A stretch of DNA of 64,000 nt from Octopus sinensis (lineage: Eukaryota), in contig NC_043014.1 of NCBI RefSeq assembly GCF_006345805.1, positions 23,622,001-23,686,000 on the forward strand, read 5' to 3'. Numbering within the stretch: the stretch's first letter is position 1; each line of letters starts with the position of its first letter. The notes beneath the pieces were generated by a model, which saw only the letters and a list, made by a program, of their open reading frames with translations, was not told the origin of the DNA and made no database searches. This document shows, in pieces, positions 3,062-26,574 of the stretch. Both the position numbers and the translations under genes were made by a program.

Positions 3062-3322
3062 AAAACACTATTGATGCAACAACAACAGTGCAGCAAAATG
3101 AGATTACAGGAGAGAATTTTGACAGCTTCAAAGAAGAAACAGAAAAGGGAGATGTGGTTGATACCAGTGAGACATTACCCATCAGCCAGCATTGTTTACA
3201 AAATACAACTGTTGAAGATATGTTATCTCAGGCTATAGAGAAAAGCAGAGCTGATTTTCAGGGTGATGTTGAAGTTCATGTTCCTGCTGAAATTCAAGCA
3301 ATACAACCTGTTGTATTCAATG
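3062..3322 (+). CDS. RALBP1: Probable internal coding exon (87 codons, phase 1 to phase 1) of the RalBP1 gene; acidic, low-conservation region
   Basis: Polypyrimidine acceptor tttcttttgtttctttatag ends at 3061 and donor G|GTATGT starts at 3323. The frame is open (ENTIDATTTVQQNEITGENFDSFKEE...IQPVVFN) and its phase joins the exon at 21671. No recalled similarity to vertebrate RALBP1, so the assignment is by position and phase only. Confidence 0.55.
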
Positions 3323-5604: not shown

Positions 5605-5635
5605 ATTAATTTCTTTAAGTTTCTCTCTACGAAAT

Positions 5636-5712
<77 letters not shown>

Positions 5713-5920: not shown

Positions 5921-5949
5921 ATATACATACATATATATATACGGTTGAT

Positions 5950-6100: not shown

Positions 6101-6261
6101 ACCTGTGTGAGTGTGTGTATGTGTGTATATATGTATGCATGTATATATGTGTATATATATGTGTACATATTACATGTACATCTATATATATATATATACA
6201 TCTACATGTATACATATACATCTATATGTATAGAAATACATGTATACATATACAGCTATAC

Positions 6262-6311
<50 letters not shown>

Positions 6312-6336
6312 CCATATATATACATGTATATATATA

Positions 6337-8467
6337 TCATCATCATCATTTAACGTCCGTTTTCCATGCTAGCATGGGTTTGATGGTTCGGCTGGGGTCT
6401 GGGTAGCCAGGAGGCTGCACCAGGCTCCAGTCTGATCTGGCAGTGTTTCTACAGCTGGATGCCAACAACTCCATGTATGTAGTGGGTACTTTTTACGTGC
6501 CACAGACACAGGTGCCAGGCGAGGCTGGCAACAGCCACGATCGGTTGGTGCTTTTTAAGTGCCACCGGCACGGAAGCCAGTCGAGATGGCGCTGGCAACG
6601 GTCACGTTCAGATGGTGCTTTTTACGTGCCACCAGCACTGGTATCACAACTACAATTTCCATAGATTCTTTGATCGATTTCGATTTCACTTGTCTTCGCA
6701 TGCAGAGTTTTGTGTCCAATGAAGGAAGGAGGCATAAGTGGACTGGCTACATCCCAGGTAAAGGCCACGGGTTATGGTCTCACTTGTCCTGCCGGGTCTT
6801 CTCACGCACAGCATATTTCCATAGGTCTCGGTCACTAGTCATTGCCTCGGTGAGACCTAATGTCCGAAGGTTGTGCTTCACCACCTCGTCCCAGGTTTTC
6901 CTGGGTCTACCTCTTCCACAGGTTCCCTCAACCGCTAGGGTGTGACACTTTTGCACACACCTTTCTTCATCCATTCTCGCCACATGACCATACCAGCGCA
7001 ATCGTCTCTCTTGCACACCACAACTGATGCTTTTTAGACCCAACTTTTCTCTCAAGGTACTTACACTCTGTTGAGTATGTACACTGACATGATACATCCA
7101 TCAGAGCATACTGGCTTCATTTCTTGCAAGCTTACACATATCCTCAGCAGTCAAAGCCCATGTTTCACTGCCATGTAGCATGGCTGTTCGTACACATGCA
7201 TCATACAGTCTGCCTTTTACTCTGAACGAGAGGCCTTTTGTCACCAGCAGAGGTAAGAGCTCTCTGAACTTTGCCCAGGCTATTCTTACTCGAGTAGTTA
7301 CACTTTCAGCACGCCCGCCCCCACTACTGACTTGGTTACATAGGTAACAGAAGCTATCAACTACTTCTAGTTTTTCTCCCTGGAATGTGGCGAAAGTTGT
7401 TCTCTGCACATTTTCAGTGTTTATTGCTCCTGAGCATCTGCCACATACAAAAACTATCTTCCTAGTTAGCCTTCCTTTGACATTGCTGCACCTCTTATGT
7501 GTCAATAGCTTACACTGGGTACATCTCTATAGAGTGTCTACCTATGCCTTTTCTACAGATTGAGCAGGGCCATCTACCTGAAGGCGTCTGTGGTTTGTCT
7601 ACCTTCCTACTTATTAGTACTTTGGTTTTAGCTAGGTTGATTCTAAGGCCCTTCGATTCTAATCCTTGCTTCCACACCTGAAACTTCTCCTCCAGTTCTG
7701 ATAGTGACTCAGCAATTAGAGCATAGAGGAGCTCCCAAGGGCATTCTGTCTTGAATTCCTCTGTTATTGCCTGGAGGACTATGATAAATAGGAGGGGGCT
7801 GAGGACTGAACTTTGGTGGACCCCTACCTCTACCCGAAATTCTTCACTGTACTTGTTGCCAACCCTCACCTTACTAACGGCGTCCCGGTACATGGCTCGC
7901 ACAGCTCTCACTAACCATTCATCTATCCCTAGTTTCCTCATTGACCACCAGATAAGGGATCAGGGGACCCTATCAAAGGCTTTCTCCATGTCAGCGAAAG
8001 CCAGGTACAAAGGTTTATCTTTGGCTAGGTATTTCTCTTGCAGATGTCTTACCAGGCATATAGCATCAGTAGTGCTTTTCCCTGGCACGAACCCAAACTG
8101 CATCTCATCTAAACTGACTCTCTCTCTAATTAGTTGGGCTATGACCCTCTCCGTGACCTTCATTACTTGATCCAGCAACTTGATACCTCTGTAATTATTT
8201 GTATCTAAGGCATCACCTTTACCTTTGTAGCAGTTGACTATGGTGCTGCTACACCAGTCATTGGGTATGACTCCTTCGTATATCACCTGGTTAACTATAT
8301 GGGTGACTAGGCTATAGCCGACGCTGCCAGATATTTTGAGCATCTCTGCAGTGATTCCTGATGGGCCGGGGGTTTTACCTGCCTTCATACTCTTGATTGC
8401 TTTATCTACCAAGGTACTGTCAATTCGGATAGCTGGTCCCTCTGTTGGGTCAACATTCGGCAGACTC
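6337..8467 (-). mobile_element. 5'-truncated RTE-clade LINE (RT domain, frameshifted) with intact 3' UTR and (GAT)n tail
   Basis: ORF pieces: GKAPGPSG-like, NYRGIKLL, QFGFVPGKSTTDAI, DMEKAFDRVP, GVHQxSVLSPLLF, LHGSETW, RLRWYGHV, GRGRPRKTW. Tail abuts (TA)n. Confidence 0.92.
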
Positions 8468-8584
8468 TCTCTCTATATAAGTACATGTAAATTTAAATTT
8501 AAAATAATAAGGGTGAAAAATTGAAAATTAATTTGATTAATATCAATTTAAAACCAGTGGTGTAGCATATTGAAAAGTCTGAAG

Positions 8585-8871
8585 TTTCAGAACGTCTGCC
8601 AGCCTCGTCTGGCACCTGTGTCGGTGGCACATAAAATCACCATCCGAGCGTGGCCGTCTGCCAGCCTCGTCTGGCACCTGTGTCGGTGGCACATAAAATC
8701 ACCCACTAAACTCTCGGAGTGGTTGGCATTAGGAAGGGCATCCAGCTGTAGAAACACTGCCAGATCTGACTGGCCTGGTGCAGCCTTCGAGCTTGCCAGA
8801 CCCCAGTTGAACCGTCCAACCCATGCTAGCATGGAAAGCGGACGTTAAGCGATGATGATGATGATGATGAT
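8585..8871 (+). mobile_element. RTE LINE 3' UTR fragment with (GAT)n tail
   Basis: ggcattaggaagggcatccagctgtagaaacactgccag...ggacgttaagcgatgatgatg, the same 3' UTR as 6337-6680 in the opposite orientation. Confidence 0.85.
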
Positions 8872-9580
8872 ATATAAGAGTGATGTTCACTTTCATTTCA
8901 TGTCACTTATATAATAGTTTCACTATTAAAGTGAAAGGAGTTGACATTACATAGAGAGGTGTTTTTGTTTCACTTTTGACACGTAATACTGAAATAGTGG
9001 AAAAGATATGATATGGCTGTGGGCTTGCCCTAGGGAAGAAGTTAAAAATTTCTTTTGCCCATGATACTACATGGATCCTAAGTAAGGCATGTGTAAAATT
9101 TGAATGAAATTGGTTGTGTAGTTCTCAAGTTTTAGGGATTCACACAGACAGACACACATTCTCAGTTTTATATATATAGATATATACCTTTGTACATTTA
9201 TATTTAACATGCATATGTACACTCAAATGTAGAAAGACCTTTGTTGTAGTAATTGCCTTGGAGGCAAAATTCTCTTTATATGTTATGTCTGAGAATTATA
9301 TGACTGTGATGTTTATTTACAATTATCATGCACTATCAAGGCAGGGAGACATAAACACACGCACCTGTATGCCCATGCATATGCACTCAATAATTGGCTT
9401 CTTTCAGTTTCTACCTACCAAATCCACTGAAACATGTTTTGGTTGGCCCAGATCTATAGTAGGAATCATCTAGCCTAAGTGATTCGATACAAAACTATGT
9501 ATTTGGGAAGCAAACTTCTTAACTATACAGCCATACCTACTCTCACAAACATACACACACATTTATGTATATGTATTTAT

Positions 9581-9860
9581 ATATACTGTTATGTCTGGGG
9601 ACTGTCATTTTCTTTTTGTGCCTTATTATGTAACACATGCACCGGTAAAATTTCCACGTTTTTCTTATTTTTATTGTCCTAAAATTTTCATTGCGTCTTG
9701 CAACCTTTGAGAGTCAAAACTATTGAAAAAGTTGTAAGACACAACGAAAATTTTAGGACAATAAAAATAAGAAAAAAGTGGAAATTTTACCGGTGAGTGT
9801 GTTACATAATAAGGCACAAAAAGAAAAAAATTCTCCCCAGACACAACAGAATATGCTTCA
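9581..9860. mobile_element. Fold-back (MITE-like) palindrome, approx 130-bp arms
   Basis: ctgttatgtctgggga...ttttaggacaat arms are reverse complements: tgtgccttattatgtaacac / gtgttacataataaggcaca and ccggtaaaatttccac / gtggaaattttaccgg. Confidence 0.8.
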
Positions 9861-9909
9861 ACACTCAAACTCATATAAAGAATCTTGCAAACCAAATCCA
9901 AGAACGAAA

Positions 9910-9954
<45 letters not shown>

Positions 9955-9956
<2 letters not shown>

Positions 9957-11852
9957 TCATCATCATCATCGTTTAGCGTCCGCTTTCCATGCTAGCATGG
10001 GTTGGACGGGTCAACTGGGGTCTGTGAAGCTGGAAGGCTTCGTCAGGCCTAGTCAGATCTGGCAGTGTTTCTACGGCTGGATGCCCTTCCTAACGCCAAC
10101 CACTCCGCGAGTGTAGTGGGTGTTTTTTACGTGCCACCTGCACAGGTGCCAGACAGAGCTGGCGAACGGCCACGAACGGATGGTGCTTTTACGTGTCACC
10201 GGCACGGGGCCAGGCGATGCTGGCAACGGACACGAACGGATGGTGCTTTTACGTGCCACCGACACGGGGCCAGACAGAGCTGGCAAACGGCCACGAACGG
10301 ACGGTGCTTTTACGTGTCACCGGCACGGGGCCAGGCGAGGCTGGCAACGAACATGAACGGATGGTGCTTTTACGTGCCACCGAGACGGGGCCAGGCAGAG
10401 CTGGCAAACGGCCACGAGCGAATGGTGCTTTTACGTACGTATCACCGGCACGGGTGCCAGACGAGGCTGACAGCGGACACGAACGGATGGGTCACTTAAC
10501 CCCTGCTTTCTGATATATGATTTGATTTTGATTGTTCTCACTGGTTTTGCCGGGTCTTCTCACGCACAGCATACTTCCATAGGTCTCGGTCTCTGGTCAT
10601 TTCCTTGGTGAGACCTAGAGTTCGAAGGTCGTGCTTCAACACCTCGACCCAGGTTTTCCTGGGTCTACCTCTTCCACAGGTCCCCTCAACTGCCAGGGTG
10701 TGGCACTTTTTCACACACCTATCTTCATCCATTCTCACCACATGACCATACCAGCGCAATCGTCTCTCTTGCACACAACATCTGATTCCTCTTAGGTCCA
10801 ACTTTTCTCTCAAGGTACTTACACTCTGTCGACTATGAACACTGACATTACACATCCAACGGAGCATACTAGCTTCATTTCTCGCGAGCTTACGCATGTC
10901 CTCAGCAGTCATGGCCCATGTTTCACTGCCATGTAGCATGGCTGTTCGTACACATGCATCATACAGTCTGCCTTTTACTCTGAGCAAGAGGCCTTTAGTC
11001 ACCAACAGAGGTAAGAGCTCCCTAAACTTTGCCCAGGCTATTCTTACTCTAGCCGTTACACTTTCAGCACACTGACTTGGTCACCAAGATAACGGAAGCT
11101 ATCAACTACTTCTAGTTTTTCCCCCTGGAAAGTGACGGAAGTTGTTTTCTGCAGATTTTCAGAGGTTAATGCTCCCGAGCATCTGCCACATACAAAAACC
11201 ATCTTCCTAGTTAGCCTTCCTATGACATTGCTGCACCTCTTATGTGTCCATAGCTTACACTTGGTGCATCTTATAGAGTTTCTACCTACACCTTTTCTAC
11301 AGATCGAGCAGGGCCATCTACCTGAAGGCGTTTGTGATTTGTCTACCTTCCTACTTATTAGGACTTTGGTTTTAGCTAGGTTGACTCTAAGGCCCTTCGA
11401 TTCTAAACCATGCTTCCACACCTGAAATTTCTTCTCCAGTTCTGATAATGACTCAGCAATTAGAGCAAGGTCATCAGCATAGAGGAGCTCCCAGGGGCAT
11501 CCTGTCTTGAATTCCTCCGTTATTGCCTGGAGGACTATGATAAATAGGAGGGGGCTGAGGACTGAGCCTTGGTGGACCCCTACCTCTACTTTGAATTCTT
11601 CACTGTACTCATTGCCAACCCTCACCTTACTAGCAGCGTCCCTGTACATGGCTTGCACAGCTCTCACTAACCATTCATCTATTCCTAGTTTCCTCATTGA
11701 CCACCATATGAGGGATCGGGGGACCCTGTCGAAGGCTTTCTCCATGTCAACAAAAGCCAGGTACAGGGGCTTATCTTTGGCTAGGTATTTCTCCTGCAGC
11801 TGCCTTACCAGGAATATAGCATCAGTGGTACTTTTCCCTGGCACGAAACCAA
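9955..11852 (-). mobile_element. 5'-truncated RTE LINE with expanded approx 60-bp repeats in the 3' UTR
   Basis: ORFs 11056-11868 and 10538-11005 include YADDLAL, DMEKAFDRVP and GVHQGSVLSPLLF. (GAT)n tail sits next to (TA)n. Confidence 0.93.
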
Positions 11853-12069
11853 ATATATATACATACATATTTAAAGATGCAAAACCATCACAAAAATATC
11901 ACAAAAACTGCTACTACTTTTGTGATATTTTTGTAGCTTTAATAATAAAGTATATTACTCTGCCTTTAGTATTCGAGTACTATTTTTTTGCGATCTTGTT
12001 TCACATTTATGTGCTTACTCTGGTGTGTGTGTGTGTGTATATATATATATAAAATACAAAATACATAAA

Positions 12070-12700
12070 CATCCTGGGGAAGACTCTGGGCTTCGATGAG
12101 AGGCAGCTAGCTGACCTTTTTGGGAGGACTTTCGGGTCGAGATTTCTGGATAACTATCAGAAATCTTTGACCTGGCTGTGCTACCGATCGGCTTTACCGG
12201 TTCGAGAAAGGTTGTCAAGGCATGGTACTGACACCTCCCCCACGTGTCCGAGGTGCGGGCATGCCAATGAAACGGTTACGCACGCCTTCGTACACTGTGA
12301 GGAGTCAAAGGAGTTGATGGCCTTTGCCAAACAGCTGTTGTTGGATGCGGAAAGAGTATGACTCTTGTCCGAGTTCATGATAAAGATTGTATCACCTTCC
12401 TCTTTCACCAAAGAAAAGAAGGTAGCTTTTCTCTGCGTAGTAACCATACTGAAAGATGTGGTATGGAAGATGCAAGCAAAAGGGATTGTGACAGGTCAAT
12501 TCATCTCCGGACGTGGGCTGGTGAATTACGTCACTGCCCATCTGTCCAGCAAGATCCATCTGGAGAAGAGGAGCCTGCTGCAAAGAGCGTTTGGAAAAAG
12601 ATGGACGACACTGATAAGAAAGATGAGAACACACAAGGCTGTGCTTGCATGGTCGGTCGGAGCATAAAAGGAAGGAAAAAGACTACCAAAAGGGATAACC
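12070..12700 (+). mobile_element. Tx1/L1-like LINE 3' fragment (C-terminal zinc knuckle)
   Basis: WLCYRSALPVRERL...TCPRCGHANETVTHAFVHC matches the zf-RVT CxxC-x-ETxxH-C pattern. Confidence 0.75.
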
Positions 12701-12719
12701 AACCGGCGGGTTAATTCAC

Positions 12720-15700
12720 TAACCCGGACCCAAATTCCATCCAACCATCATTTTATTTTTAACTCTCATCCGCAAAACATATATAAATCCACTAAACCCA
12801 TTCCGATCGACCCCAAAGGCCTACGTAATTCTGATGGCTATGAAACCGCCCTTTCTAATTTATCCGATGAAGAATCGAATGCCGCAGTTCACAGTAGAGA
12901 ACAGAACGACCATTTTGCCCACTCAAGATCAGCAATCATTTATGGTAAAGCTGAATCCACCGGTGATACAGGCATAAAACGCCTAAAAGATGACATAAAT
13001 TTTGTTTCCGTTTTAGTTGGAGAATTGTTCTCAGTCAACGAAAATGTCAGTATCCATAAGGTTGCTCGGCTAGGAAGATTCCAAGTGAACTCAACCTCAG
13101 ACACTAGACCACGCCCAATAAGAGTAATCTTTTCTTCCGATCAGGAGGCTTCAACCTTTCTGAACAGAGCTCAGAAGCATGCCTGGGAGGACCCCAATAT
13201 GGGTTTTCGCGAGAGAGAATTCGTCGGAGAAACCTGATATCCGAACTGAAGATGAGAAAACAGATGGGAGAGAAGGGTTTACGCATCCAAGATGGACAAA
13301 TAATCAAGTCCTACCTCTGGTCGCATGCTGTAGTGCTGACAGGGAAAGTGAATCGAGGGTTAATCGAAGTAAAGTAGATACCCCCGACAACGATGCTATC
13401 TCTGATACCCCTTATTCTGCTTGTTCCCTAATTCCCGCCCCTCAAACTTCACAGCTCAGCATTGTCTATACCAACTCGTGCTCCTTATTTCCAAAGTTCA
13501 GCAAATTATTTACACTGGCCATGTGTGATTCCCCAGATGTGATAGCTATCACCAAGACTTGGCTGACTCCAGCAGTAAAGGACTTGGAAATCCACCTACA
13601 GGGCTACACCCTCTTCAGATGTGACAGAAAAAAGGCGAGGTGGAGGCGTTGCTGTGTATGTTAAATCTGATCTCAAACTGTCCAGTTGTATTCTACCCAG
13701 TAATGTTCAACCTACAACAAAATTCGATGCCTGTCCATGTTAGCTGTCTACAGGCCGCCTCTTGCCGACCCCCAGGATGATGCTCATTTACTCGAAGCGA
13801 TAAGATTTGTTTCAGCTTCTCATGAATGTTTGATATTAGGAGACTTCAACGCTCCCACAATCGACTGGCCCACATCAATTTGTACATCATCTTCCCGGTT
13901 CAGCCAGGCCCTTCTTGACGTGGCTGAAGATTGTTTTCTATCGCAACATGTTGAATCTCCGACAAAGCATCGGTCTGGGCAGCAGCCATCTATGCTGGAT
14001 CTGGTATTCTCCCACTATCCAAGATCAGTGTCAGGCTTATCTGTGTGCGTCCCTCTTGCCAAGAGTGATCACGCGGTCCTGAAGTTCGACATGCACACAA
14101 CTTTTTCTACACCCACGACTACTTCGCTGCCACGTAGAGTCTTTTCTGCAATCAATCTTGAAATTCTAACCGAGGCTTCTGCACTGGCGATCCCTGATGA
14201 CAATGTCCTCAGTTGACGAACTATGGTCGTCCCTCAAAGCATATGAAATCTGGTTGACTGACCAAGCAGTTCCTGTTGGGCTTCCCAAGAAGAAGAAACA
14301 CAAGCCCTGGGTGACGAAGAAGGTTAAATGAGAACTTCGACTCAGAGGTATTGCTTGGTCTGAATTCAAAAATCTAGATTCGACTGCAGCTTTTGAGGTG
14401 TACAAAGCTCAATGAGACCGAGCCGTGAAAATTGAAAAGGAAGAACGCTTCAGATATGAATACAGAATCGCGGAGAATAGTGATAATCTGCCCAATTTTC
14501 AAGAAAGGGAGCCGAGAAGACCTGCTTAACTACTGACCGGTTTCCCTTACTTCAATAATCAGCAAGATGTTCGAAACCATCCTTAAGAAAAGTATGTTGC
14601 TCCACCTCCAAAACACAGCCTCTATCTCTGATTCCCAACACGGCTTCGTGCTGAAGAGATTATGCTTGACCAACTTATGGTAATGGAAGAATTGGTGACG
14701 CATATCCTGGATGATGGTGATGCTGTTGACATCGTTTTATTGGACTTTGCCAAAGCTTTTGACTCGGTTAACCACTGCCTATTACTTGTCAAGCTTCAAG
14801 CATATAGTTTCCATCCGGATATTGTACGATGAGTTGGCGCCTTCTTCTCAGATCGCTCCTTCCAAGTCCAAGTTAATGGTTTGCTGTCCGACGTCTCCAG
14901 TGCGAGCAGTGGTGTGCCTCGAGGTTCAGTGCTTGGGCCCTTATTATTTTTAGTCTTCATAAATGACTTGCCCGACGACCTCACGCAACACACCCTTCTA
15001 TTTGCCGATGATGTCAAACTGGTCGCTCCTCGCGGTGATATAGATGATCTTCGTCGATGCCTCCACCAAGTTTGGAGATGGTCTAACGAATGGGACCTGT
15101 GTCTGAACGTGTCAAAGTGCTGTCATTTGCCTGTTGGCTCCTCTCCTGCAACTCAACTTGATTTCGAGCCGGAGAGGACCGACCAGGTAAAGGACCTGGG
15201 TATCTTGGTGGATTCTTCCTTTTCGCCTTCGGCCCAGTGCGTCCATGCTGCCAAAAAAGCACATGGAGTTCTGTTTTTGAGTCGACGGTCATTCGGAATG
15301 CTCACAGCAGCCATATTCCTACCGTTCTATGTCACGCTGGTGAGACCCATATTGGAGTACAGGATTCAGGCCTCTTCTCCTTATCTCCTCAAAGACATAC
15401 ATCATCTCGAAAGAGTCCAGAAGCTGGCTACCCGCATGGTTCATGGTCTCAAGCATTTGTCTTATGAGGAAAGGCTGAAGACGCTTGACCTTTATTCTCT
15501 AGAAAAATGACGACGTCATGGTGATCTCATTCTTGCTCACAACATCATAAGCGGAAAGTGTAACCTCTCGAAAGAGCTGTTCTTCACTCCTGCTCCAGAG
15601 TGTCAGCTGCGGAGTCACTCCAAAAAGCTCTATCTGTGACGATTTCATCTCAATCGAAGGAGAGGGGCTTTCTCCGTCCGGGTTGCGGATCCGTGAAATA

Positions 15701-15880
15701 AGCTTCCGGACGAGATAGTGAAGATGCCGACGACCGCTCGGTTCAAAGTCTCTCTTGATCAGATATGTCCTGAACTCTTTGCTTGAACACCCTCCCTGTA
15801 CATAACTCCATGTCCCCCTACATGGCCTTGCATTTTGAGCCAAAAAATTAACTTAACTGAAATTAAAGTTAATTAAATTA
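12720..15880 (+). mobile_element. Decayed CR1/Jockey-group LINE (ORF1 remnant, APE endonuclease, RT)
   Basis: YTNSCSL, DVIAITKTWL, VYRPP, ILGDFNAPTIDW, LDLVFS, SDHAVL, then LDFAKAFDSV, SGVPRGSVLGPLLFLVFINDL, LFADDVKL. Many stops and frameshifts. Confidence 0.9.
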
Positions 15881-16042
15881 ACTTAACCATCCGTTTTTTC
15901 ATAATATAAATAAGCGTGTTTCTATGCTAAATGTCCCTTGTCTGTCCTTGTAATGTCCCCTCTATGTAAACCTCTTTATAAGGAAATAAAGAAATATCTC
16001 TCGCACATAGCTGGTATGTTTCCATGTATTATGTATTGTGTG

Positions 16043-16140
16043 TAAAAAACATCCTGATGAGGGGAGTGTCAATTTGAATATATGAAATGTTTCATATTAA
16101 TTGGCACATCTCCGAAACGGCCCGTAGATGAACATTTTTG
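16043..16140 (+). ncRNA. Type I hammerhead ribozyme (intronic, sense to RalBP1), probable Penelope pseudo-LTR
   Basis: CAUC CUGAUGA(16054-60) GGGGAGUGUCAAUU[...]AAUUGGCACAUCUCC GAAAC(16114-18) GGCCC GUA GAUG. Stem I is 4 bp plus a distal A5/U5 helix, stem II is about 14 bp, stem III is ACG/CGU. Predicted cleavage after 16126. Confidence 0.9.
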
Positions 16141-16482
16141 TAATTTTGTATATTTATCTTTTCTGTATTTTTTCTGGAATTTTAGGACGTCATTTTAATA
16201 TGTCATTGTATGTTTTATTATCCCAAATTTTTAATTTAACCAATAATTTACCAAATGTTTTATGATTTTAAGCGTAAATTCAATGTGTTTTATATGCAAC
16301 ACTGATTCTTATATATTTATATATTTTATATGATGTTTATTTATTTATATATTATTATATTTTTAAACGTTGCACTTTATATCTATTCTGTAGATATAAA
16401 TGAATATATGTATGTGTTTGATCTTTCTGTGGATTTTGTAATGTTCCTTTAGTTGCTGCTCACATTGCCTCCGCTCAGATTA

Positions 16483-16532
<50 letters not shown>

Positions 16533-16652
16533 CTTCCATTTAACCCCTGGTCCAGGGGAAATGACCCATCCTCAATAATGTTTTTCTCTGATCGCCATTT
16601 AACCATTTAATCCTAGCATTTCACCACTTCCGGAAAGTGAAAAGTTAAATAT

Positions 16653-16734
16653 GTCTTTGTATAGAGTCTGATGAGCTGTCCACAAGGCTGTAGTTTTTGT
16701 GGATATGAAACCATTGGTCACTCTTTGACCAGAC
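16653..16734 (+). ncRNA. Type I hammerhead ribozyme (intronic, sense to RalBP1), second unrelated sequence family
   Basis: gucu-uuguau-AGAGU CUGAUGA(16668-74) G-c-UGUCCACAA[..]UUGUGGAUA-U GAAAC(16707-11) CAUUG GUC ACUCU-uugacc-agac. Stem I is 5+4 bp, stem II about 10 bp, stem III near-palindromic ACCAUUGGU. Predicted cleavage after 16719. Confidence 0.9.
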
Positions 16735-16784
16735 TTTAACTTTATATTATAATATATATTATTATTATAACATATATATATATA

Positions 16785-17074
16785 CTAGCAGTATAGCCCG
16801 GCTTTGCTTGGGATTAAGTTAGGATTATTAAGCTAATCAAGCTCTTTATTTCAAACCAAACTAAGTAACATCAATGTAAAATTTGAGCGAAATCCGTTGC
16901 AATTGGTAAACTTTTGGCTGAAAACGAGTTGCTGACAATTTGATTGGGAGATCCCATAAGGAATTGGTTTATTGATTTTTTTTTTTTTCGTTTTTGGAGA
17001 ACTTAAAGCATTCAAAGATCCCCCGATCCCCCGATCCTCTGTGTGAGAAGCGGTTATGTTCAGATCACAACTAA

Positions 17075-17120
<46 letters not shown>

Positions 17121-17800
17121 GCAACGCACACAAATATATATGTACATACACCTATTTTCGAAACATTGTTTACAAAATGATAGCTGTTCGTTTGCGAAGG
17201 AGCGTGTCTCGAGCAACAAACACACATACACATAAACATATACGTACATACATCTATTTTCGAAACATTGTTTACAAAATGCAACAGTTTCAAAACATTG
17301 TTTACAAAATAATAGCTGATTGTTTGCGAAGGAGCGTGTCTCGGGCAACACACACACACACACACACACACATTGCATACATGTGTTTTGTACGCATACA
17401 TGTTTGTGTGTGTGTGTGTGTGACTGAAGCTATTCACACATACATACATACATAACAACCCCTATCTGTCTGATTTTGCCTCTCAACCACTCATTAAAAG
17501 GATGAAGTTTTTAAAAAAATGTTCTCTCTCTCTCTCTCTCCCTCTTCCTCTCTTTACACCATCGTTAGAAGGGGACTTAACTCATATTTGCAAATGGCAT
17601 ATTTCTCCGATTTGAAAAATGTTTAAAAGTTATGGCTTAAAATTATTTTTACCGTTATTCGCTGCTGCCTCAGGGGAAAATAATTTGACGAAAATACAGC
17701 TAGGGTCGTAACGAATGTCCTAAAATTTGAGTGACATGCGTGCGAATTTGTGGACGTGCATAATTTACATTCATGTACACACACACACACATCATGCCTT
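16785..17800. mobile_element. Helitron-like non-autonomous element(s) with internal tandem repeats
   Basis: Start tatactagcagtatagcccggc is shared with 54577. An internal duplicated block tattttcgaaacattgtttacaaaat...gcgaaggagcgtgtctcg is present. Confidence 0.45.
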
Positions 17801-17812
17801 TTATATATATAC

Positions 17813-17845
<33 letters not shown>

Positions 17846-17849
<4 letters not shown>

Positions 17850-19350
17850 AGTTGGTCATCCCGGTTTTCAAGCAGGGAAACAGATCCCTCGCACTCAACT
17901 ATCGCCCAATCTCACTCACCTCCCACATCATTAAAGTGTTTGAAAGAGTGTTAAGATCAAGGATAGCTGACTTCCTGGAGACCCACAAACTCCTAAATGC
18001 AAATCAGCATGGCTTTCGCTGTGGCAGGGACTGTCTAACACAGCTCTTACACCACATTGAAGATGTACTCAAAGTCTTGGGAACAGGTTCGAACTCTGAC
18101 GTCATATATCTTGACTTCAGTAAAGCGTTCGACAGGGTAGACCATAATATCCTACTCTCAAAATTGGCAAATCTTGGAATCCATGGAAAAGTTCTACACT
18201 GGATTAAGTATTTCCTGGCGAATAGAACACAACATGTTGTAGTTGATGGAGTCCACTCAAGCCCAGCAAAAGTCACCAGCGGTGTTCCCCAGGGGAGTCT
18301 TGGGTCCGCTACTCTTCATAATTTACATAAACGATCTTTCCAGTGTCGTACATTACTGCAAAGTGAAAATATTTGCTGATGACACTAAGCTTCAGCAAAT
18401 TGTCAATGAAGAAGCAGACCGAACTCAACTCCAGTCTGATCTATATGCTGTAAGTCAATGGGCAGACAGAAACAAAATGCAACTGAATGAGTGAAAATTT
18501 GAGCTGATGCATTTTGGAAGAAATTCCTCACTAAAACAGCCATACTCTCTTCCTTCAGGGGAACTGCTCACAGCCTCTAACAATATCAGAGACCTGGGTG
18601 TAATTGTTGATGACGATCTCAGTTGGAGTGCACACATCAACAAGAAGGTCGATATAGCTCGTAGGATGAGTTCCTGGATCTTAAGAACTTTCCGGTCCAG
18701 AGAACAAGGTGTCATCATACCACTTTTCTCCTCCTTTGTACGGCTACACCTCGAATATTGCTGCCCACTGTGGTCTCCCCATACAAGACAAAACATCTCG
18801 AGGATTTAGTCACCCCAGAGGGCACTCACTAAACAAATTGAAGGCATGGCTGCTCTCGATTATTGGGATCGCCTTAAAGCCTTGAAACTTTACTCTCTCC
18901 AGCGTCGCCGTGAGCGGTACATCATTTGTACGATGTGGAGAATATATCGCCAACTTTGCCCAAACGACCTGAACATTAGCTTCAAGGTTCATCCAAGACT
19001 GGGACCATGGGCCATACGTCCCCTACCCAATTCAAGATCACAGTATACATGTACACTGCAACATAATTTCTTTTCCTCAACAGGCCCTGCCCTATTTAAC
19101 ATTGTCCCGAGGGAGATCAAAGAGGAAAAGGATCCCATCAACTTTAAACGGAGTCTGGATAGATTCTTTCAAAGAATACCAGATAAGCCACCCATAATTG
19201 GATACAACTCACCCAACAAGAACTCACTACTTGAATGGACCATAAACAAAACTTGACTTAAACAGGATTCGAATAATCCTATCAGGTGGTGCTATTAAGT
19301 TAGACATGGCCTGGACCAATCTTTGGTCGAAACATATCTAAGTTTATCTA

Positions 19351-19358
<8 letters not shown>
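17846..19358 (+). mobile_element. 5'-truncated CR1/L2-type LINE (RT), embedded in (TA)n
   Basis: NYRPISLTSH, NQHGFRCGRDCLTQLL, YLDFSKAFDRV, SGVPQG, IFADDTKL, KLYSLQRRRERY. (TA)n on both flanks. Confidence 0.92.
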
Positions 19359-19383
<25 letters not shown>

Positions 19384-19492
19384 ACCAGCCAGCAGGTTGT
19401 CACCATTTGAAAGCTAATACAATGTGAAGAACCATACCGTGATCAGTGGTTGATAACAGTATTTGATAGTAGTCTGTTTGATAGTGATATGG

Positions 19493-20470
19493 GTCATCCC
19501 ATAAATAATGCAGTTTTTTTATACTTCTTTTATTTTTCAAAATTAAGATAAACAAAGTTAATTTAAATCTAAAATATACCCTCCTTCATTTTCTACAATG
19601 CTCTTCCATCTCTATCTGGTAGACTTGCAAGGCCCATCTTCCAAAATTCACTTGTCCGTAACAAAAAATACTTCTCCAGTACTGTTCTGATCTCATCTAC
19701 ATATATTTTTACCATCCAAATGATTTTGAAGACTGCGGAATGAATGATAATCAGACAGGGAAATGTCCAGCGAATATGGTGGGTGGGGCATCATTTCCCA
19801 TTCAAACTGTTCTAGTCTTTGGAATGTCATCCTCGCTGTATGTGACTGAGCATTATCCTGATGGAAGAACACCTGCTATAAAAGCAGGTAGTAATTTTAC
19901 TTTGTGCTTATTCTTAGTGCAAGTTTTGAAGAGTGCAGTTCAATTTTAAGTTATTTTTTTCAAAGCTATAATGGAAGTAGCAAAGGAGCATATTTGGCAT
20001 ATTTTGCTTTATGAGTTCAATAAAGGCAACTACGCAACAGAATGTGCGAGGAATATTAATGCAGTACATGGGGATTAGACAATAATTGTAAGCCAGTTTC
20101 AATGGTGGTTCCAGAAATTCAGAGCCGGAAATTACAGTTGAGAAGACAAACCTTATCCTGGAAGATCTGTAGAGCTTGACGAGGATGTCCTGTAAACTCT
20201 GGTGGAACAAAATCCCATCATAGCTGTTGAGGAACTCAGAGAAGCTTAGATTTGGTCATTCAACCATTCATCAAAACCTGCGTCACTTCCATTTTAGCTT
20301 TGACAAAATAACTGTTAAGATAGAACTGCACTCTTCAAAACTTGCACTAAGAATAAGCACAAGGTAAAATGACTACCTGCTTTTATAGCAAGTTGATGCA
20401 GGTAGTTAATCCCATCCTTTTCTGACTTTTAGTTTATGCAATTGAAAAAAAATCACATTATTTATGGGAT

Positions 20471-20473
<3 letters not shown>
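19493..20473 (+). mobile_element. Internally deleted mariner/Tc1 element
   Basis: Terminal inverted repeats gtcatcccataaataatg / cattatttatgggatgac followed by TA. Transposase N-terminal remnant (HIWHILLYEFNKG...WFQKFRAGN) at about 19970-20280. Confidence 0.8.
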
Positions 20474-20504
<31 letters not shown>

Positions 20505-20505
<1 letters not shown>

Positions 20506-21200
20506 CATAACTTAAGTCATTTCGATTTAAGTCGTTCTCGATTATATGTCGGTTTTCAAAAATAACATATGGAAAAATCAAAATCAAAGTAAGTCATTTT
20601 ATTCGACTTTATGTCTGTCCACCACAAATATTGGAATTGTAAAATCACTAGAAAACCATTAAAATCACATAAAATCATGTTACTGTACAATAAATAAGAA
20701 TAAAGCATATAAAATCATTAAAATAGGTACAGTAAATGTTAAGATACACACCATAAAGTAGTGTAGTTAGTGAATGAAATCATGAAATCAGCTGTGTTGT
20801 CTTATTTATTGGTCCTTCGGAGCAATTGTAGTTCCAATATCTACCATTAGCTGTTGTTGTCACTCGTGATTGTTTTGAATTCAGATTTGTTTACATCTTT
20901 TTATTGGCTACTTTATCATTCTCATTCATATGTGACTTTATTGAAAGTGCTAAGCGTCATGCTACAATGCTGGACGATAAACTGGCTGTGATAAAAACCA
21001 TGAAAAAGGTGAAAAAGTGGTAGCAATTGCACAATCTTTTGGGATGAGTCAGACAACTGTATCGACGATTGTACATAAGAGGGACAAGATTTTAGCACAC
21101 ATGGTTTTTATTAACTATGTATTATTGAAAATGCATTCATAAATAAAGTACAGAATTGGGAATGGTTATCGGTTTAGCCTAGAGACAAGTTAATTTGGCT
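20505..21200 (+). mobile_element. Tigger/pogo-like DNA transposon remnant
   Basis: Frameshifted CENP-B-type HTH: LDDKLAVIK...KGEKVVAIAQSFGMSQTTVSTIVHKRDKI at about 20970-21100. Confidence 0.65.
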
Positions 21201-21261
21201 TAAGTTGTGTCTCCTGGAACCAATTAACAATGTCGGGTGGGGTATACAAGTGAAATCATAG

Positions 21262-21537
21262 TCATAGCCAATGCCGGTACTGTCTGACTGGCACCCATGC
21301 CGGTGGCATGTAAAAAGCACCGTTGGGCCTCATGGAGGCAGTGACAGGTGACCGAGACATTCTGTGATATACCGTGCTTGTATATCACAGTATGGAGTAG
21401 TTGGCGTTAGGAAGGGCATCCAACTGTAGAAACCTTGCCAAATCAGATTGGAACCTGGTGCAGCTCTCTGGCTTACCTGTTTTCAGTCAAACTGTCCAAC
21501 TCATGCCAGCATGTAAAACGGATGTTAAATGATGATT
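21262..21537 (+). mobile_element. RTE-type 3' tail fragment
   Basis: gttggcgttaggaagggcatccaactgtagaaacc...ggatgttaaatgatgat. Confidence 0.75.
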
Positions 21538-21670
21538 ATATTGATATTGATATGAAACTTTCATTCTAAGTTTTATTTTAATTTTTTTAATTTTCTCAAA
21601 ATTTTCAACTTTGTTTCTTTTCCTTTTAGTTTTTTACATCCTATTTATCTTTCAAAATATTTATAACTAG

Positions 21671-21760
21671 ATTGCAAATACATTGAGGATGAAGAACTGC
21701 TGCGTCTTTTAGAAGAAGAGGAAGCTCTAAAACTAGAGGAGGAGGAATTAATTGCTATTG
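21671..21760 (+). CDS. RALBP1: RalBP1 coding exon (phase 1 to phase 1)
   Basis: AG acceptor at 21669-70 and GT donor at 21761. DCKYIEDEELLRLLEEEEALKLEEEELIAIG resembles recalled human NEEVINILLAQENEILTEQEELLAME. Confidence 0.8.
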
Positions 21761-23945: not shown

Positions 23946-25581
23946 TCTGTCATTATTTTACTGAAATGTTGTGTTCATATGTTTGTTGTTAAGCTACTGA
24001 AAAGTTGTGTTCACCCATCTGTTACAGATAAACACCTCACTTCATTTGTTTGATAATCTGTAGCTATATCATGATATTATTAATTTGTAATAGAAATAAA
24101 ATGATCACTTGTCATCTGTTTGTATGTTTCTAACTGAAATGACAAGTATTCAAACATATGAATCTCCAGTATGAGATGAGTGGGTTAGGTAGGACTTGGT
24201 ACAGGTAGCATGAGACTAATCAACTCTGAAAGGCAGAGGTCATTGTAGTAAGAGTAAAATAGGCTGAGTGAGGAGACAGCATATCTGTACAGTAGTGTGA
24301 AAAATATCTCATCCTTAGGAAAGAAGCTGAAGTGTATTGGTGAGCAGGTCCATGCCAGTGAACTGTGTGGCTTTGGAGAATGCAGTGTAGTCTGTTTGTG
24401 TGTTTAGATACTGGAGCAATATTCCAGTGTTATTCTCATTTGAGTTTTGTAGAGTTAAAAACTGTTCGGAGCTCAAATATTTTCTGGTTGTGAGAAGGAA
24501 AGCCAAACTTTGAGCAGTAGTTTATACTACTTTGTAGATGTGAAATCATCAAGAGAGATCATTGTTACTAGTAAGTGCTACTAGTCTTTGTCTTTACAGT
24601 TTGTCAGTTATTTTAGAGCAATTCTTATTTATTGTTTGATTCATGATAGTTTGAGATTATTGATACTCCTTACTGGCAATGTCTTCGTTTTTTTTGGCAG
24701 CAGAAAAACTATTTTACACTACAAACTTATATTACAATTTAAGAAGTCATGGAGAAAAGAGATAATATTTATATGCCAGGAATATAGTTCAAGCAAATCT
24801 AATAAAACTAAAACAGTTTTCTGTGTTAACAGTATTAACATTAATAATTTTTTACTGGTGAATTACAGCAGGCTAAGTTTATAAAATGTCAGACTCCTGG
24901 TTGATAGAGCAGTTTGTGTCACATTGTTAGTACTGCCCTGGGTTGAATGTCCTCGATATTTGACATTCTCTGGTGCAGTCTAGCTGGGTTCTATGTGCAG
25001 GTACAGCTCACTACTGTATGTATTGGATTGTATTATAGTGAATGAACCAAAATATTGGGAAAATTGACAATGGGAAACTTGTCCAAAGTATTCTTGAAAT
25101 ATCCTTAAAAAGTGGTAGGATCACCCTGACTAGTATCTAGATTATTAAAAAACAAACAAATAACAACAATCACAACAGTTGTTGTTATTTAGCTATCAAA
25201 ATCGATCCATTATGTCACCCCCACCCCGATATAGTATATCTAGGATTATATTATCTAATGTGTCCTTGCTTTTTTGTAAGATAATAAAGCATGATTTGAA
25301 GGAAACTTTGCTGCTTTTCTAGCAGGTCAGGCAACAGCAAAGAGGTTCCTACATTCACTCATTTATCTAACATATAATATAGAGCATATGTAGTATATTT
25401 TGTTGTTACTATTTCATCTCGGATCAATCCTGATTGAGCCAAGTTATGATGAAAGGTGTTCTAACTATAGCTAAGACTACATTATCCAATGTATCCTTCA
25501 ATTTTTGTAGAATAGTATTTGAGTTATATTTAGTTACTATTTCTTGTTGCTCTTATGACAAACTCTTGTTTGTTGTTACAG

Positions 25582-25784
25582 GTGATGAGCTTCATCAGAA
25601 AATTGAGACAGAGCAGAGTGAAATTGAACGACTACACCAAGAAATTGTGGAGCTTAACTACTTAAGGCAGGATTCTGATTTAGATGAAATCAGCTGCAGT
25701 TCGGAGAGTAGCTCAGAAAGTGAAGATGAGGAAGAATTGCAAGAACATCTGAACCAGTTAATTCGTGACAATGAACTGCTTGAG
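25582..25784 (+). CDS. RALBP1: RalBP1 coding exon (phase 1 to phase 0), C-terminal coiled coil with acidic Ser-rich patch
   Basis: ttacag acceptor and GAG|GTATGT donor. DELHQKIETEQSEIERLHQEIVEL...SSESSSESEDEEELQEHLNQLIRDNELLE matches recalled human LRRQIASEKEEIERLRAEIAEI...SSESESESEDEEELQIILEDLQRQNEELE. Confidence 0.92.
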
Positions 25785-26574
25785 GTATGTATATGAGGAT
25801 TTAATGTTTAGCTCTCAAGTCGATGTTGTTTGAAACAACAGTTTTTGTGGCTTCCTCAATAAAACTTTAGTGCTTTAATTCTAATTGAAACCATTCTACC
25901 ACTTTCTTAGGATTGTGCTATAGGTGTAGTATATTTCAATTAGTCAGATTAGCTGTGCAGTGAAATCTTGACTTTTTGCATCTATTAGACTGTGTTAGTC
26001 ACTTAGCATGGTTCAAAAACTGGAGTACAATTGTGCCAGTTTGCACCTTGTTTTCTGTGGTAGGCATTCTTATTACTGATCATGAGCTGATCTGGTAGTG
26101 AGTAGTTGTTCAGTGATATTTGGGGAGGTACCTTTGAGTCACATCTTCATCTGTCAAACAGTGAAAGTTTTTCAGTGCCATTATTAGCAAATTTCTAGAT
26201 TGAAGGAATATTTTGTTGAAATTCTGTAAATAGTGTTGGTTTCACTTTTCAAAAGTGAGAATGTGTGTGTGTGTGTCAGTCTGTGTGAATCCCTAAAACT
26301 TGAGAACTACCCAACTGATTTCATTCAAATTTTACACATACCTTACTTAAGGTCCATGCAGTGTCATGGGCCAAAAGATTTTTCAACTTCTTGCCTAATG
26401 CGAGCCAGGGGCAATCTCTTATCTCTTACACTACTTTGTGTCAAAAGTGAAGCAATAACGTCTCTATTGTATTGTGAGATACTTTCAGTTTAGTATTTTC
26501 ACTATTAATACTGAAACTGTGAAAGTGAAACTACTATCTCACATATATATCTCATGTATATACATGTTCGCAGG

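What the first reader, a model, noticed from the sequence alone, without database searches (positions are those of the whole stretch)
16043..16734. Two intact, unrelated hammerhead ribozymes 0.6 kb apart on the sense strand of a RalBP1 intron
Seen: both have complete cores and extended stems I-III (GUA cleavage after 16126, GUC after 16719). They differ in sequence and are separated by a (TA)n tract. Both are on the + strand inside the intron between exons 3062-3322 and 21671-21760, so they would be transcribed in the host pre-mRNA. Known: sense intronic self-cleaving ribozymes (CPEB3 HDV-like, amniote intronic HHRs) can affect splicing or mRNA output. Inference: double cleavage could sever the intron, excise an approx 590-nt RNA with 5'-OH and 2',3'-cyclic phosphate ends that could circularise, and modulate RalBP1 processing. 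They may also be neutral recent Penelope pseudo-LTR insertions.
Basis: partly seen in the sequence, partly recalled or inferred. Interest (0 to 1): 0.78.

Follow-up and report, generated by a model that had tools for sequence, protein, structure and literature searches.

The report
Two solitary retroelement-type hammerheads in RalBP1 intron
Two different hammerhead self-cleaving RNA motifs really do sit 0.6 kb apart on the sense strand of an octopus RalBP1 intron, but they look like leftover pieces of Penelope-type mobile elements that should cut poorly on their own, not like a device that regulates the gene.

Summary
Window 16050-16130 (HHR1, cut after A16126) and 16663-16724 (HHR2, cut after C16719) carry the full hammerhead core (CUGAUGA...GAAA...UH) framed by three helices on the + strand. 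This is far more than chance gives: 3 motifs in the window against 0.01-0.05 in shuffles and in decoy-core scans of the real sequence.

The window is Octopus sinensis chromosome CM016876.1. A RalA-binding-protein-1 model (RhoGAP + RLIP76 Ral-binding domain) joins exon 3062-3322 to exon 21671-21760, so both motifs lie in a sense intron.

"Intact with extended stems" is overstated:
- Helices III are 3 bp and helices I are 4-5 bp.
- HHR2 closes helix II with G.U plus a bulge.
- No Rfam hammerhead model matches, even at E<=10.

The architecture is that of the minimal or dimeric type-I hammerheads of Penelope-like elements and animal retrozymes, which cleave poorly as single copies. The two helix III sequences cannot pair with each other. 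HHR2 lies at the 3' end of a 207-bp block inserted in a (TA)n tract, and HHR1 lies just outside the 3' end of a CR1-like LINE.

No other copy and no orthologous intron could be obtained, so the retroelement origin and the neutrality are inferred, not shown. This is a new member of a known kind, of low to moderate interest.

The parts
16044..16139 (+). HHR1, a type-I hammerhead motif. Helix I 16050-16053/16127-16130 with an outer A5/U5 extension, core CUGAUGA 16054-16060, long helix II 16061-16113, GAA 16114-16116, helix III 16117-16125 (3 bp, loop GCC). GUA site; predicted cleavage between 16126 and 16127.
   Evidence: Sequence. Hits in the strict and relaxed descriptor scans. The hammerhead-compatible fold is only 2.4 kcal/mol above the MFE. 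No Rfam hammerhead hit.
16663..16724 (+). HHR2, a type-I hammerhead motif. Helix I 16663-16667/16720-16724, core 16668-16674, helix II 16675-16706 closed by G.U with a bulged C16676 followed by 11 bp, GAA 16707-16709, helix III 16710-16718 (3 bp, loop AUU). GUC site; predicted cleavage between 16719 and 16720.
   Evidence: Sequence. Hit in the relaxed descriptor scans. The hammerhead fold is 7.5 kcal/mol above an MFE that pairs the core with the 3' strand of helix III. No Rfam hammerhead hit.
16533..16739 (+). A 207-bp non-repetitive block carrying HHR2 about 20 nt from its 3' end, bounded on both sides by TA microsatellite. Read as a short (5'-truncated or non-autonomous) retroelement insertion into (TA)n.
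   Evidence: Flanking TA tracts form inverted/direct repeat I1/D1 with 207 nt between them. CpG o/e 0.25. No other copy in the window or in L001.
16487..16532 (.). (TA)23 microsatellite between the two hammerheads. It is the left flank of the HHR2 block; the degenerate right flank is at 16740-16790.
13025..16010 (+). Decayed CR1-like LINE directly upstream of HHR1: AP-endonuclease 13737-14216, RT 14881-15510, ORF remnant ending about 15787 with three in-frame stops. Its 3' tail ends about 16010, so HHR1 is not part of it.
   Evidence: Pfam Exo_endo_phos_2 and RVT_1. Translation. Closest relatives are CR1-type RTs. The 3' tail 15935-16010 is shared with a SINE-like copy at L001 3866-3926, and the similarity stops at AAAGAAATAT.
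3062..3322 (+). RalBP1 coding exon upstream of the intron (aa 546-632 of the 804-aa protein).
   Evidence: 100% match to P0121 residues 367-452. Pfam RhoGAP + RLIP76_Ral-bd on P0121. Named ralA-binding protein 1-like. AG/GT splice sites. tblastn.
21671..21760 (+). RalBP1 coding exon downstream of the intron (D|CKYIEDEELLRLLEEEEALKLEEEELIAI). Its codon phase matches exon 3062-3322.
   Evidence: Sequence and splice sites. The peptide is contiguous in P0121/P0124.

Best explanation
HHR1 and HHR2 are two independent, solitary hammerhead motifs of the retroelement type, that is, the minimal or dimeric type-I hammerheads carried by Penelope-like elements and their non-autonomous derivatives (animal retrozymes). 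They arrived with short, 5'-truncated or non-autonomous insertions in a TA-rich, transposon-filled stretch of the 18.3-kb RalBP1 intron.

Both are transcribed as part of the pre-mRNA because they lie in the sense orientation. Each is a single copy with a weak 3-bp helix III, lacks the canonical helix I/II loop contacts, and has no partner to dimerise with. They are therefore expected to cleave slowly or not at all, and to be tolerated passengers rather than regulators of RalBP1.

**Shown:** the motifs, their significance over chance, their architecture, the intron and strand, the TA flanks, and that HHR1 lies outside the neighbouring LINE.

**Inferred:** the retroelement origin, the poor activity and the neutrality.
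For: **Motif enrichment.**

**Architecture matches published PLE/retrozyme hammerheads.**
- Helix I is 4-5 bp and helix II is long: 14 bp plus a 7-bp distal hairpin in HHR1, 12 bp in HHR2.
- An unpaired nucleotide lies at the 5' side of helix II in HHR2.
- Helix III is 3 bp with a near-palindromic sequence. Self-duplexes reach -10.2 and -8.9 kcal/mol. PMC4209133 describes these same features.
- That paper found no cleavage by single minimal motifs and low cleavage by dimeric constructs. PMC7229834 reports poor cleavage of a single-copy retrozyme monomer.
- The HHR1 x HHR2 helix III heteroduplex is only -2.4 kcal/mol.

**Insertion context.**
- HHR2 sits 20 nt from the 3' end of a 207-bp block bounded by (TA)n. 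PLEs carry hammerheads near their 3' ends, and a (TA)n target bias is reported for the Naiad PLE clade (PMC8557442).
- The third hammerhead, 129-60 on the minus strand, has the same layout: a TA-rich tract, a block of about 330 nt, then the hammerhead near the 3' end, with a perfectly palindromic helix III.
- A C-terminal GIY-YIG PLE remnant lies at 61639-62240.
- A 540-bp tandem array with a hammerhead-like motif, (AT)n flanks and an inverted partial copy lies at 42266-45566. So PLE-type elements populate this locus.

**Surroundings and decay.**
- The surrounding intron is a patchwork of decayed LINEs.
- The HHR2 block is CpG-depleted, and U11.1-G12 is what a decayed CpG at the canonical C11.1 would leave (inference).
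- Orientation is not consistent with respect to the gene: two motifs are sense and one is antisense.
Against: - No second copy of either hammerhead block was found: not in the 64-kb window, not in 62 kb of additional O. sinensis sequence, and not in four public DNA scans. These collections hold almost no octopus DNA, so membership of a repeat family is unproven.
- No PLE ORF or pseudo-LTR flanks either motif.
- HHR1 is flawless. It has a canonical core and a G10.1-C11.1 pair, it retains three CpGs, and its hammerhead fold lies within 2.4 kcal/mol of the MFE. This fits either a young insertion or maintenance by selection.
- The extra nucleotide between A9 and G10.1 that is typical of PLE minimal hammerheads is absent in HHR1.
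- Activity was not measured.
Confidence: 0.65

Rival explanations
1. Both ribozymes are active in the RalBP1 pre-mRNA. Double cleavage severs the intron, releases a 593-nt RNA (16127-16719) with 5'-OH and 2',3'-cyclic phosphate ends that a tRNA ligase can circularise, and lowers or tunes RalBP1 mRNA output. This would be an exapted ribozyme pair.
For: - The catalytic cores are complete and the motifs lie in the sense orientation within a confirmed intron.
- The HHR1 hammerhead fold is near the MFE and carries no decay.
- Retrozyme RNAs with such ends are circularised in animals (PMC7229834).
Against: - The helices III are weak, dimerisation is not possible, and HHR2 has a non-canonical helix II closure and a strongly competing fold.
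- There is no match to any Rfam hammerhead model, including HH9 and HH10.
- The two motifs are unrelated and sit in separate insertion blocks amid TE debris.
- Efficient sense ribozymes in introns are expected to be deleterious. Vertebrate retrozymes are depleted from introns (bioRxiv 10.64898/2026.07.22.740005).
- No conservation data exist.
Confidence: 0.1
2. The two hammerheads and the 0.6 kb between them are one composite mobile unit. This would be a non-autonomous Penelope-like or retrozyme-like element bounded by two different ribozymes, and not two separate insertions.
For: - The two motifs have the same orientation. Their spacing (593 nt) lies within the size range of ribozyme-bounded retrozyme RNAs (PMC7229834).
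- PLE pseudo-LTRs each carry a hammerhead (PMC4209133).
Against: - The two ribozymes and their flanks share no similarity, whereas pLTRs and retrozyme repeats are copies of each other.
- A pure (TA)23 microsatellite and low-complexity AT sequence fill the interval.
- The HHR2 block is delimited by TA tracts on both sides.
- CpG content differs between the two blocks: 0.88 against 0.25.
Confidence: 0.1
3. HHR1 belongs to the 3' UTR of the adjacent CR1-like LINE. That would be a LINE-borne hammerhead.
For: HHR1 starts only about 250 nt after the LINE stop codon, on the same strand.
Against: The LINE 3' tail can be delimited by its similarity to a SINE-like copy elsewhere (L001 3866-3926). The similarity ends at about 16010, 34 nt before the HHR1 helix I extension, and the L001 copy has unrelated sequence downstream. 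The second LINE in the window has no hammerhead after its ORF.
Confidence: 0.03
4. The motifs are chance matches to a loose consensus in AT-rich DNA.
For: Rfam hammerhead models do not match. A loose descriptor without a helix II requirement gives about 8 spurious hits in the window.
Against: With all three helices required, shuffles give 0.013-0.027 hits per window. Decoy cores on the real sequence give 0.045, with a maximum of 1 in 400, against 3 observed.
Confidence: 0.02

Closest known systems
Minimal or atypical type-I hammerheads of Penelope-like elements (Cervera and de la Pena 2014, PMC4209133)
   Same: - Short helix I (4-5 bp) and a larger than usual helix II.
- An unpaired nucleotide at the 5' side of helix II (HHR2).
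- A short, near-palindromic helix III suited to dimer formation.
- Mostly found as dispersed single motifs from truncated elements, highly variable in sequence within a genome.
- Missed by standard models.
   Different: - No PLE ORF or pseudo-LTR is adjacent; the nearest PLE remnant is 45 kb away.
- HHR1 lacks the extra nucleotide between A9 and G10.1.
- HHR2 has G.U instead of G10.1-C11.1.
- Helix II of HHR1 is far longer (53 nt) than the 7-8 bp described.
- No family of copies could be assembled here.
Animal non-LTR retrozymes (Cervera and de la Pena 2020, PMC7229834; Li et al. 2026 preprint)
   Same: Type-I hammerheads with a weak helix III, set in low-GC, non-coding units of a few hundred bp linked to PLEs. 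Double cleavage yields RNAs that can be circularised.
   Different: Retrozymes are tandem arrays of the same monomer, each with the same ribozyme. Here the two ribozymes and their flanks are unrelated and single-copy. The array at 42717-45566 in the same window fits that definition better.
Amniote intronic hammerheads HH9 and HH10 (Rfam RF02275, RF02277)
   Same: Type-I hammerheads on the sense strand of introns of protein-coding genes, thought to derive from retroelements.
   Different: HH9 and HH10 are ultraconserved and have stabilised helices and loop-loop contacts (own knowledge). The octopus motifs match neither Rfam model and have no demonstrated conservation.
Schistosoma Sm-alpha and newt satellite 2 hammerheads
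   Same: Metazoan type-I hammerheads embedded in short, SINE-like or satellite retroelement units, with an unstable helix III.
   Different: Those occur in thousands of near-identical copies and match Rfam Hammerhead_1. No copies and no match were found here.

Membership tests
Hammerhead ribozyme (general) | Conserved catalytic core C3 U4 G5 A6 N7 G8 A9 / G12 A13 A14 / A15.1-U16.1 / H17 | tested here: met
   Both motifs carry CUGAUGA, GAA, an A-U closing pair and A17 (HHR1) or C17 (HHR2).
Hammerhead ribozyme (general) | Three helices I, II and III around the core, with G10.1-C11.1 closing helix II | tested here: inconclusive
   HHR1: all are met (I 4 bp plus an extension, II 14 bp with one bulge plus a hairpin, III 3 bp; G-C closure). 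HHR2: I 5 bp and III 3 bp, but helix II closes with G.U followed by a bulged C.
Hammerhead ribozyme (general) | Match to a curated covariance model (Rfam Hammerhead_1, _3, _II, HH9, HH10) | tested here: not met
   No hammerhead family at gathering score, nor at E<=10 on 1.8-kb, 110-nt and 91-nt inputs.
Hammerhead ribozyme (general) | Site-specific self-cleavage giving 2',3'-cyclic phosphate and 5'-OH ends | not testable with these tools
   Needs in vitro transcription or RNA end mapping.
Penelope-like element hammerhead (pLTR HHR) | Located in direct flanking repeats (pLTRs) of an RT + GIY-YIG ORF | tested here: not met
   No PLE ORF lies next to either motif. The neighbours are a CR1-like LINE and another LINE. 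No direct repeat links the two blocks. The only PLE EN remnant is at 61639-62240.
Penelope-like element hammerhead (pLTR HHR) | Short helix I, enlarged helix II, and a palindromic 15.2-16.2/loop 3 that allows a dimeric helix III | tested here: met
   Helix I is 4-5 bp. Helix II is 14 bp (HHR1) and 12 bp (HHR2). ACGGCCCGU and ACCAUUGGU self-pair as 4+4 bp around one mismatch, at -10.2 and -8.9 kcal/mol. The criteria come from PMC4209133.
Penelope-like element hammerhead (pLTR HHR) | [quoted passage not shown] | tested here: inconclusive
   Absent in HHR1. HHR2 has an unpaired C, but after G10.1 rather than before it.
Penelope-like element hammerhead (pLTR HHR) | Belongs to a multi-copy consensus family with covariation within the genome | not testable with these tools
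   Only about 126 kb of O. sinensis DNA was available, and it holds no second copy. The public scans returned nothing.
Animal non-LTR retrozyme | Head-to-tail tandem repeats (about 150-450 bp) of one monomer, each with the same type-I hammerhead | tested here: not met
   The HHR1 and HHR2 regions are unrelated, and no tandem structure exists in 15850-16900 apart from (TA)n.
Conserved intronic hammerheads (HH9/HH10-like) | Sense orientation within an intron of a protein-coding gene | tested here: met
   The intron 3323-21670 of RalBP1 is defined by P0121/P0124 and by the splice sites.
Conserved intronic hammerheads (HH9/HH10-like) | Conservation of the motif in the orthologous intron across species | not testable with these tools
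   The O. vulgaris gene range (101.9 kb) is too long to be served. P0121 is not on record. The Logan hits are transcripts without introns.

The most novel reading that the evidence does not exclude
HHR1 (flawless core, near-MFE hammerhead fold) and HHR2 both self-cleave within the nascent RalBP1 pre-mRNA of octopus. This would be a domesticated ribozyme pair that releases a 593-nt linear or circular intronic RNA and throttles RalBP1 mRNA production. It would be the first functional intronic hammerhead system outside amniotes, and the first built from two unrelated ribozymes.
Probability: 0.05. Interest if true: 0.7.

Novelty: new member of a known kind. Interest (0 to 1): 0.27.

Why it matters
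If these motifs are retroelement relics, as the evidence suggests, the finding adds octopus to the animals whose genes carry Penelope or retrozyme-type hammerheads in sense introns. The paper library searched here holds no description of such motifs in Octopus. Only 235 Rfam Hammerhead_1 hits in the giant squid are mentioned.

The finding also shows that Rfam models miss this class.

It would matter more if the motifs proved active. A sense intronic ribozyme pair that cuts a housekeeping Ral effector pre-mRNA would be a new case of ribozyme exaptation, and a natural two-ribozyme source of circular RNA.

Tried and rejected
**Hypotheses tested and rejected.**
1. Chance match. Rejected by dinucleotide shuffles and by decoy-core scans of the real sequence.
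2. HHR1 as part of the CR1-like LINE 3' UTR. Rejected, because the LINE tail shared with a SINE-like copy ends at about 16010.
3. The pair as a retrozyme or pLTR pair. Rejected, because there is no similarity between the two blocks.

**Searches that found nothing.**
4. Rfam hammerhead membership: no hit at any threshold.
5. Other copies:
   - self-BLAST of the window;
   - BLAST and descriptor scans of L001;
   - four pattern scans of the metagenome and GTDB genome collections.
6. Orthologous locus:
   - exact look-ups of window ORFs 14881-15510, 16599-16721 and 16082-16198 are not on record;
   - P0121 is not on record;
   - the P0124 gene range is too long;
7. The LINE protein search gave only relatives at about 40-53% identity, useless for comparing 3' ends.
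8. The first search with the 116-aa joined exon peptide found nothing. The exhaustive representative search then found P0121.
9. A one-mismatch-core scan for decayed hammerhead relics in 126 kb found nothing beyond HHR2.
10. tRNA scan of the window: none.
Full report
**What is in the sequence**

Reading window 15800-17000 confirms both motifs on the + strand.

HHR1:
- Sequence: 5'-AAAAAA CAUC [CUGAUGA] GGGGAGUGUCAAUU...AAUUGGCACAUCUCC [GAA] ACG-GCC-CGU A | GAUG AACA UUUUU.
- Core at 16054-16060. GAA at 16114-16116. A15.1-U16.1 at 16117/16125. A17 at 16126.
- Helix II is unusually long at 53 nt: 5 bp, a one-nucleotide bulge, 9 bp, an internal loop and a 7-bp hairpin.

HHR2:
- Sequence: 5'-AGAGU [CUGAUGA] G-C-UGUCCACAAGG...UUUUUGUGGAUA-U [GAA] ACC-AUU-GGU C | ACUCU.
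- Core at 16668-16674. C17 at 16719.
- Helix II closes with a G.U wobble followed by a bulged C, then 11 pairs.

The two motifs share nothing but the core. A (TA)23 tract at 16487-16532 lies between them. "Extended stems I-III" overstates helices I (4-5 bp) and III (3 bp with 3-nt loops).

**Is it more than chance?**

I wrote an RNAmotif-like descriptor: the core, helix I of at least 4 bp, helix II, helix III of at least 2 bp, and UH.
- The strict form finds two motifs in the 64-kb window, counting both strands. They are HHR1 and a third hammerhead on the minus strand at 129-60. The expectation is 0.027 per dinucleotide-preserving shuffle.
- A form that tolerates one irregularity in helix II finds HHR1 and HHR2, against 0.013 per shuffle.
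- Real DNA has more hairpins than shuffles, so I also ran 400 decoy cores (permutations of CUGANGA and GAAA) on the real sequence. The mean was 0.045 hits and the maximum was 1, against 3 for the true core.

The motifs are therefore real hammerhead motifs and not accidents.

Rfam 15, however, reports no hammerhead family for either motif. This holds at gathering thresholds and at E<=10 on 1.8-kb, 110-nt and 91-nt inputs. They do not resemble the canonical families (Hammerhead_1, _3, _II, HH9, HH10), whose models expect a short helix II and loop-loop contacts.

**Where the window comes from, and the host gene**

- An exhaustive protein search with the translated exon 3064-3321 returned a 624-aa protein, P0121, identical over all 86 residues.
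- P0121 carries RhoGAP and RLIP76 Ral-binding domains. It is named "ralA-binding protein 1-like [Octopus vulgaris]", CAJ1099388.1.
- Its sequence runs ...ISQQ|NTIDA...VVFN|D CKYIEDEELL...LIAI|GDELHQ... This matches exon 3062-3322 joined in phase to exon 21671-21760, then to exons at 25569-25784 and 35832-36065.
- Transcript-derived proteins of other cephalopods cover these exons at 63-64% identity.
- The locus fetched for the O. sinensis orthologue P0125, L001, is 100% identical to window 26397-38920 and 39021-64000. The window is therefore O. sinensis CM016876.1, about 23.622-23.686 Mb.

The hammerheads thus lie in the sense strand of an 18.3-kb RalBP1 intron, as claimed.

**Surroundings**

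- The intron is a patchwork of decayed retroelements.
- Directly upstream of HHR1, on the same strand, is a CR1-like LINE. It has an AP endonuclease at 13737-14216 and an RT at 14881-15510. The ORF remnant ends at about 15787 and carries three in-frame stops.
- I tested whether HHR1 belongs to its 3' UTR. The LINE tail at 15935-16010 is shared with a SINE-like copy elsewhere in the genome (L001 3866-3926). The similarity stops at ...AAAGAAATAT, about 16010, which is 34 nt before HHR1, and the other copy has unrelated sequence downstream. HHR1 is therefore not part of the LINE.
- Another LINE RT follows at 17750-19256.
- HHR2 sits 20 nt from the 3' end of a 207-bp non-repetitive block (16533-16739) bounded by TA microsatellite on both sides. 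This is the picture of a short insertion into (TA)n.
- The third hammerhead (129-60, minus strand, antisense to RalBP1) repeats the layout: a TA-rich tract, a block of about 330 nt, then the hammerhead near the 3' end, with a perfectly palindromic helix III, ACAAUUGU.

**Comparison with what is known**

Cervera and de la Pena (PMC4209133) describe the hammerheads of Penelope-like elements as follows.
- Helix I is 4-5 bp, and helix II is larger than usual.
- There is an unpaired nucleotide at the 5' side of helix II.
- Helix III is very short and palindromic, so that the active form is a dimer.
- Sequence varies extremely within a genome, and most copies are dispersed single motifs from truncated elements.
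- In vitro, single motifs showed no detectable cleavage, and dimers cleaved poorly.

Other papers add context.
- Canonical metazoan type-I hammerheads in non-LTR retrozymes likewise cleave poorly as monomers (PMC7229834).
- PLEs carry the hammerhead near the 3' end. Some clades insert preferentially in (TA)n and form tandem or inverted arrangements (PMC8557442).

HHR1 and HHR2 fit this architecture.
- Their helix III segments self-pair as 4+4 bp duplexes, at -10.2 and -8.9 kcal/mol.
- The HHR1 x HHR2 heteroduplex is only -2.4 kcal/mol, so the two cannot help each other.
- In nearest-neighbour terms the hammerhead-compatible fold is 2.4 kcal/mol above the MFE for HHR1. For HHR2 it is 7.5 kcal/mol above a competing fold that pairs the CUGAUG core with the 3' strand of helix III.
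- The HHR2 block is CpG-poor (o/e 0.25, against 0.56 for the window). Its U11.1-G12 is what a deaminated CpG at the canonical C11.1 would leave. The HHR1 block is not CpG-depleted (0.88), and HHR1 keeps three CpGs. The numbers are small, so this is only suggestive that HHR2 is older than HHR1.

**Independent signs of PLE-type elements at this locus**

[quoted passage not shown] No hammerhead follows it.
- An array of about 5.3 monomers of about 540 bp lies at 42717-45566. It is flanked by (AT)n and preceded by an inverted partial copy.
- Each monomer of that array carries a hammerhead-like motif: CUGAUGA, a weak helix II with U.U at its base, GAAA, a palindromic ACGUACGU, and then U|CUCA.

**What could not be done**

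- The public DNA collections on hand hold essentially no octopus sequence. Four pattern scans for HHR1 and HHR2 found nothing.
- Neither block has a second copy in the 126 kb of O. sinensis DNA available.
- The orthologous O. vulgaris intron could not be fetched.

The retroelement origin therefore rests on architecture and insertion context, not on a demonstrated repeat family. Conservation, and hence selection, is untested.

**Verdict**

These are true hammerhead motifs in a sense RalBP1 intron. The best-supported reading (about 0.65) is two independent, solitary Penelope or retrozyme-type hammerheads carried in by short insertions in a TA-rich, TE-laden stretch. They are predicted to be weak or inactive as monomers.
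- The regulatory double-cleavage or circular-RNA idea is mechanistically possible but disfavoured (about 0.1 for activity, about 0.05 for exaptation).
- A single composite element is unlikely (about 0.1).
- LINE-borne origin and chance are essentially excluded.
- This is a new member of a known kind, of modest interest. The library searched holds no description of such motifs in Octopus.

Noticed in passing
window 53-136, minus strand: A third, well-formed type-I hammerhead: GUUUUGG [CUGACGA] GCUA...UAGC [GAA] ACAAUUGU C | CCAAAAU, with a 7-bp helix I and a perfectly palindromic helix III. Fold z-score -3.9. It lies antisense to RalBP1 in the preceding intron, at the 3' end of a block of about 330 nt that follows a TA-rich tract (about 390-430).
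   Followed up: partly
window 42266-45566 (+), flanked by (AT)n at 42013-42275 and 45565-46989: A tandem array of about 5.3 monomers of about 540 bp, preceded by an inverted partial copy (42266-42722). Each monomer carries a hammerhead-like motif: UGAG CUGAUGA UAGAAAUGUUGUUUUGACUAAUCUU GAAA CGUACGU U|CUCA. The helix III is a palindrome, but helix II is weak, with U.U at its base. It resembles a PLE-mobilised non-LTR retrozyme. The motif may instead be a chance match amplified with the repeat.
   Followed up: partly
window 38921-39020 (100 N) and the two sides of it; L001 25168-57000: In this O. sinensis assembly the C-terminal RalBP1 exons (aa 546-804) are on the + strand at 3061-36065. The N-terminal exons (aa 1-546) lie beyond the window end on the minus strand. 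The two halves of the gene therefore converge on each other on either side of an N gap, and NCBI splits the gene into a 536-aa and a 206-aa model. O. vulgaris has one 804-aa gene of 101.9 kb. This is probably a scaffold misorientation, less likely a real inversion.
   Followed up: partly
window 61639-62240 (+): A 5'-truncated remnant of a canonical (C-terminal GIY-YIG) Penelope-like element, with stops and frameshifts, ending in a CA/TA-rich microsatellite. No hammerhead motif lies downstream of it.
   Followed up: partly
window 15935-16010 and L001 3866-3926: The 3' tail of the CR1-like LINE (...CCCTTGTCTGTCCTTGT..GTCCCCTCT.TGT...AAAGAAATAT) is shared with a SINE-like element. Its upstream part (GGGGTCGATGTAATCGACT...) is unrelated to the LINE. 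This suggests a LINE-SINE partner pair in octopus.
   Followed up: no
window 10125-10490, 27422-27649, 38366-38832: Arrays of 60-62-bp (and 121/186-bp) GC-rich tandem repeats (TTTTACGTGCCACCGGCACGGGGCCAG...) recur next to LINE RT fragments. They also recur in L001. They are presumably part of an abundant octopus retroelement.
   Followed up: no
window 51472-53039 and 53118-53940: Tandem arrays of 362-bp (4.4 copies, 96% matches) and 332/175/155-bp units, also present at two other places in L001 at 90-98% identity. Their nature was not examined.
   Followed up: no
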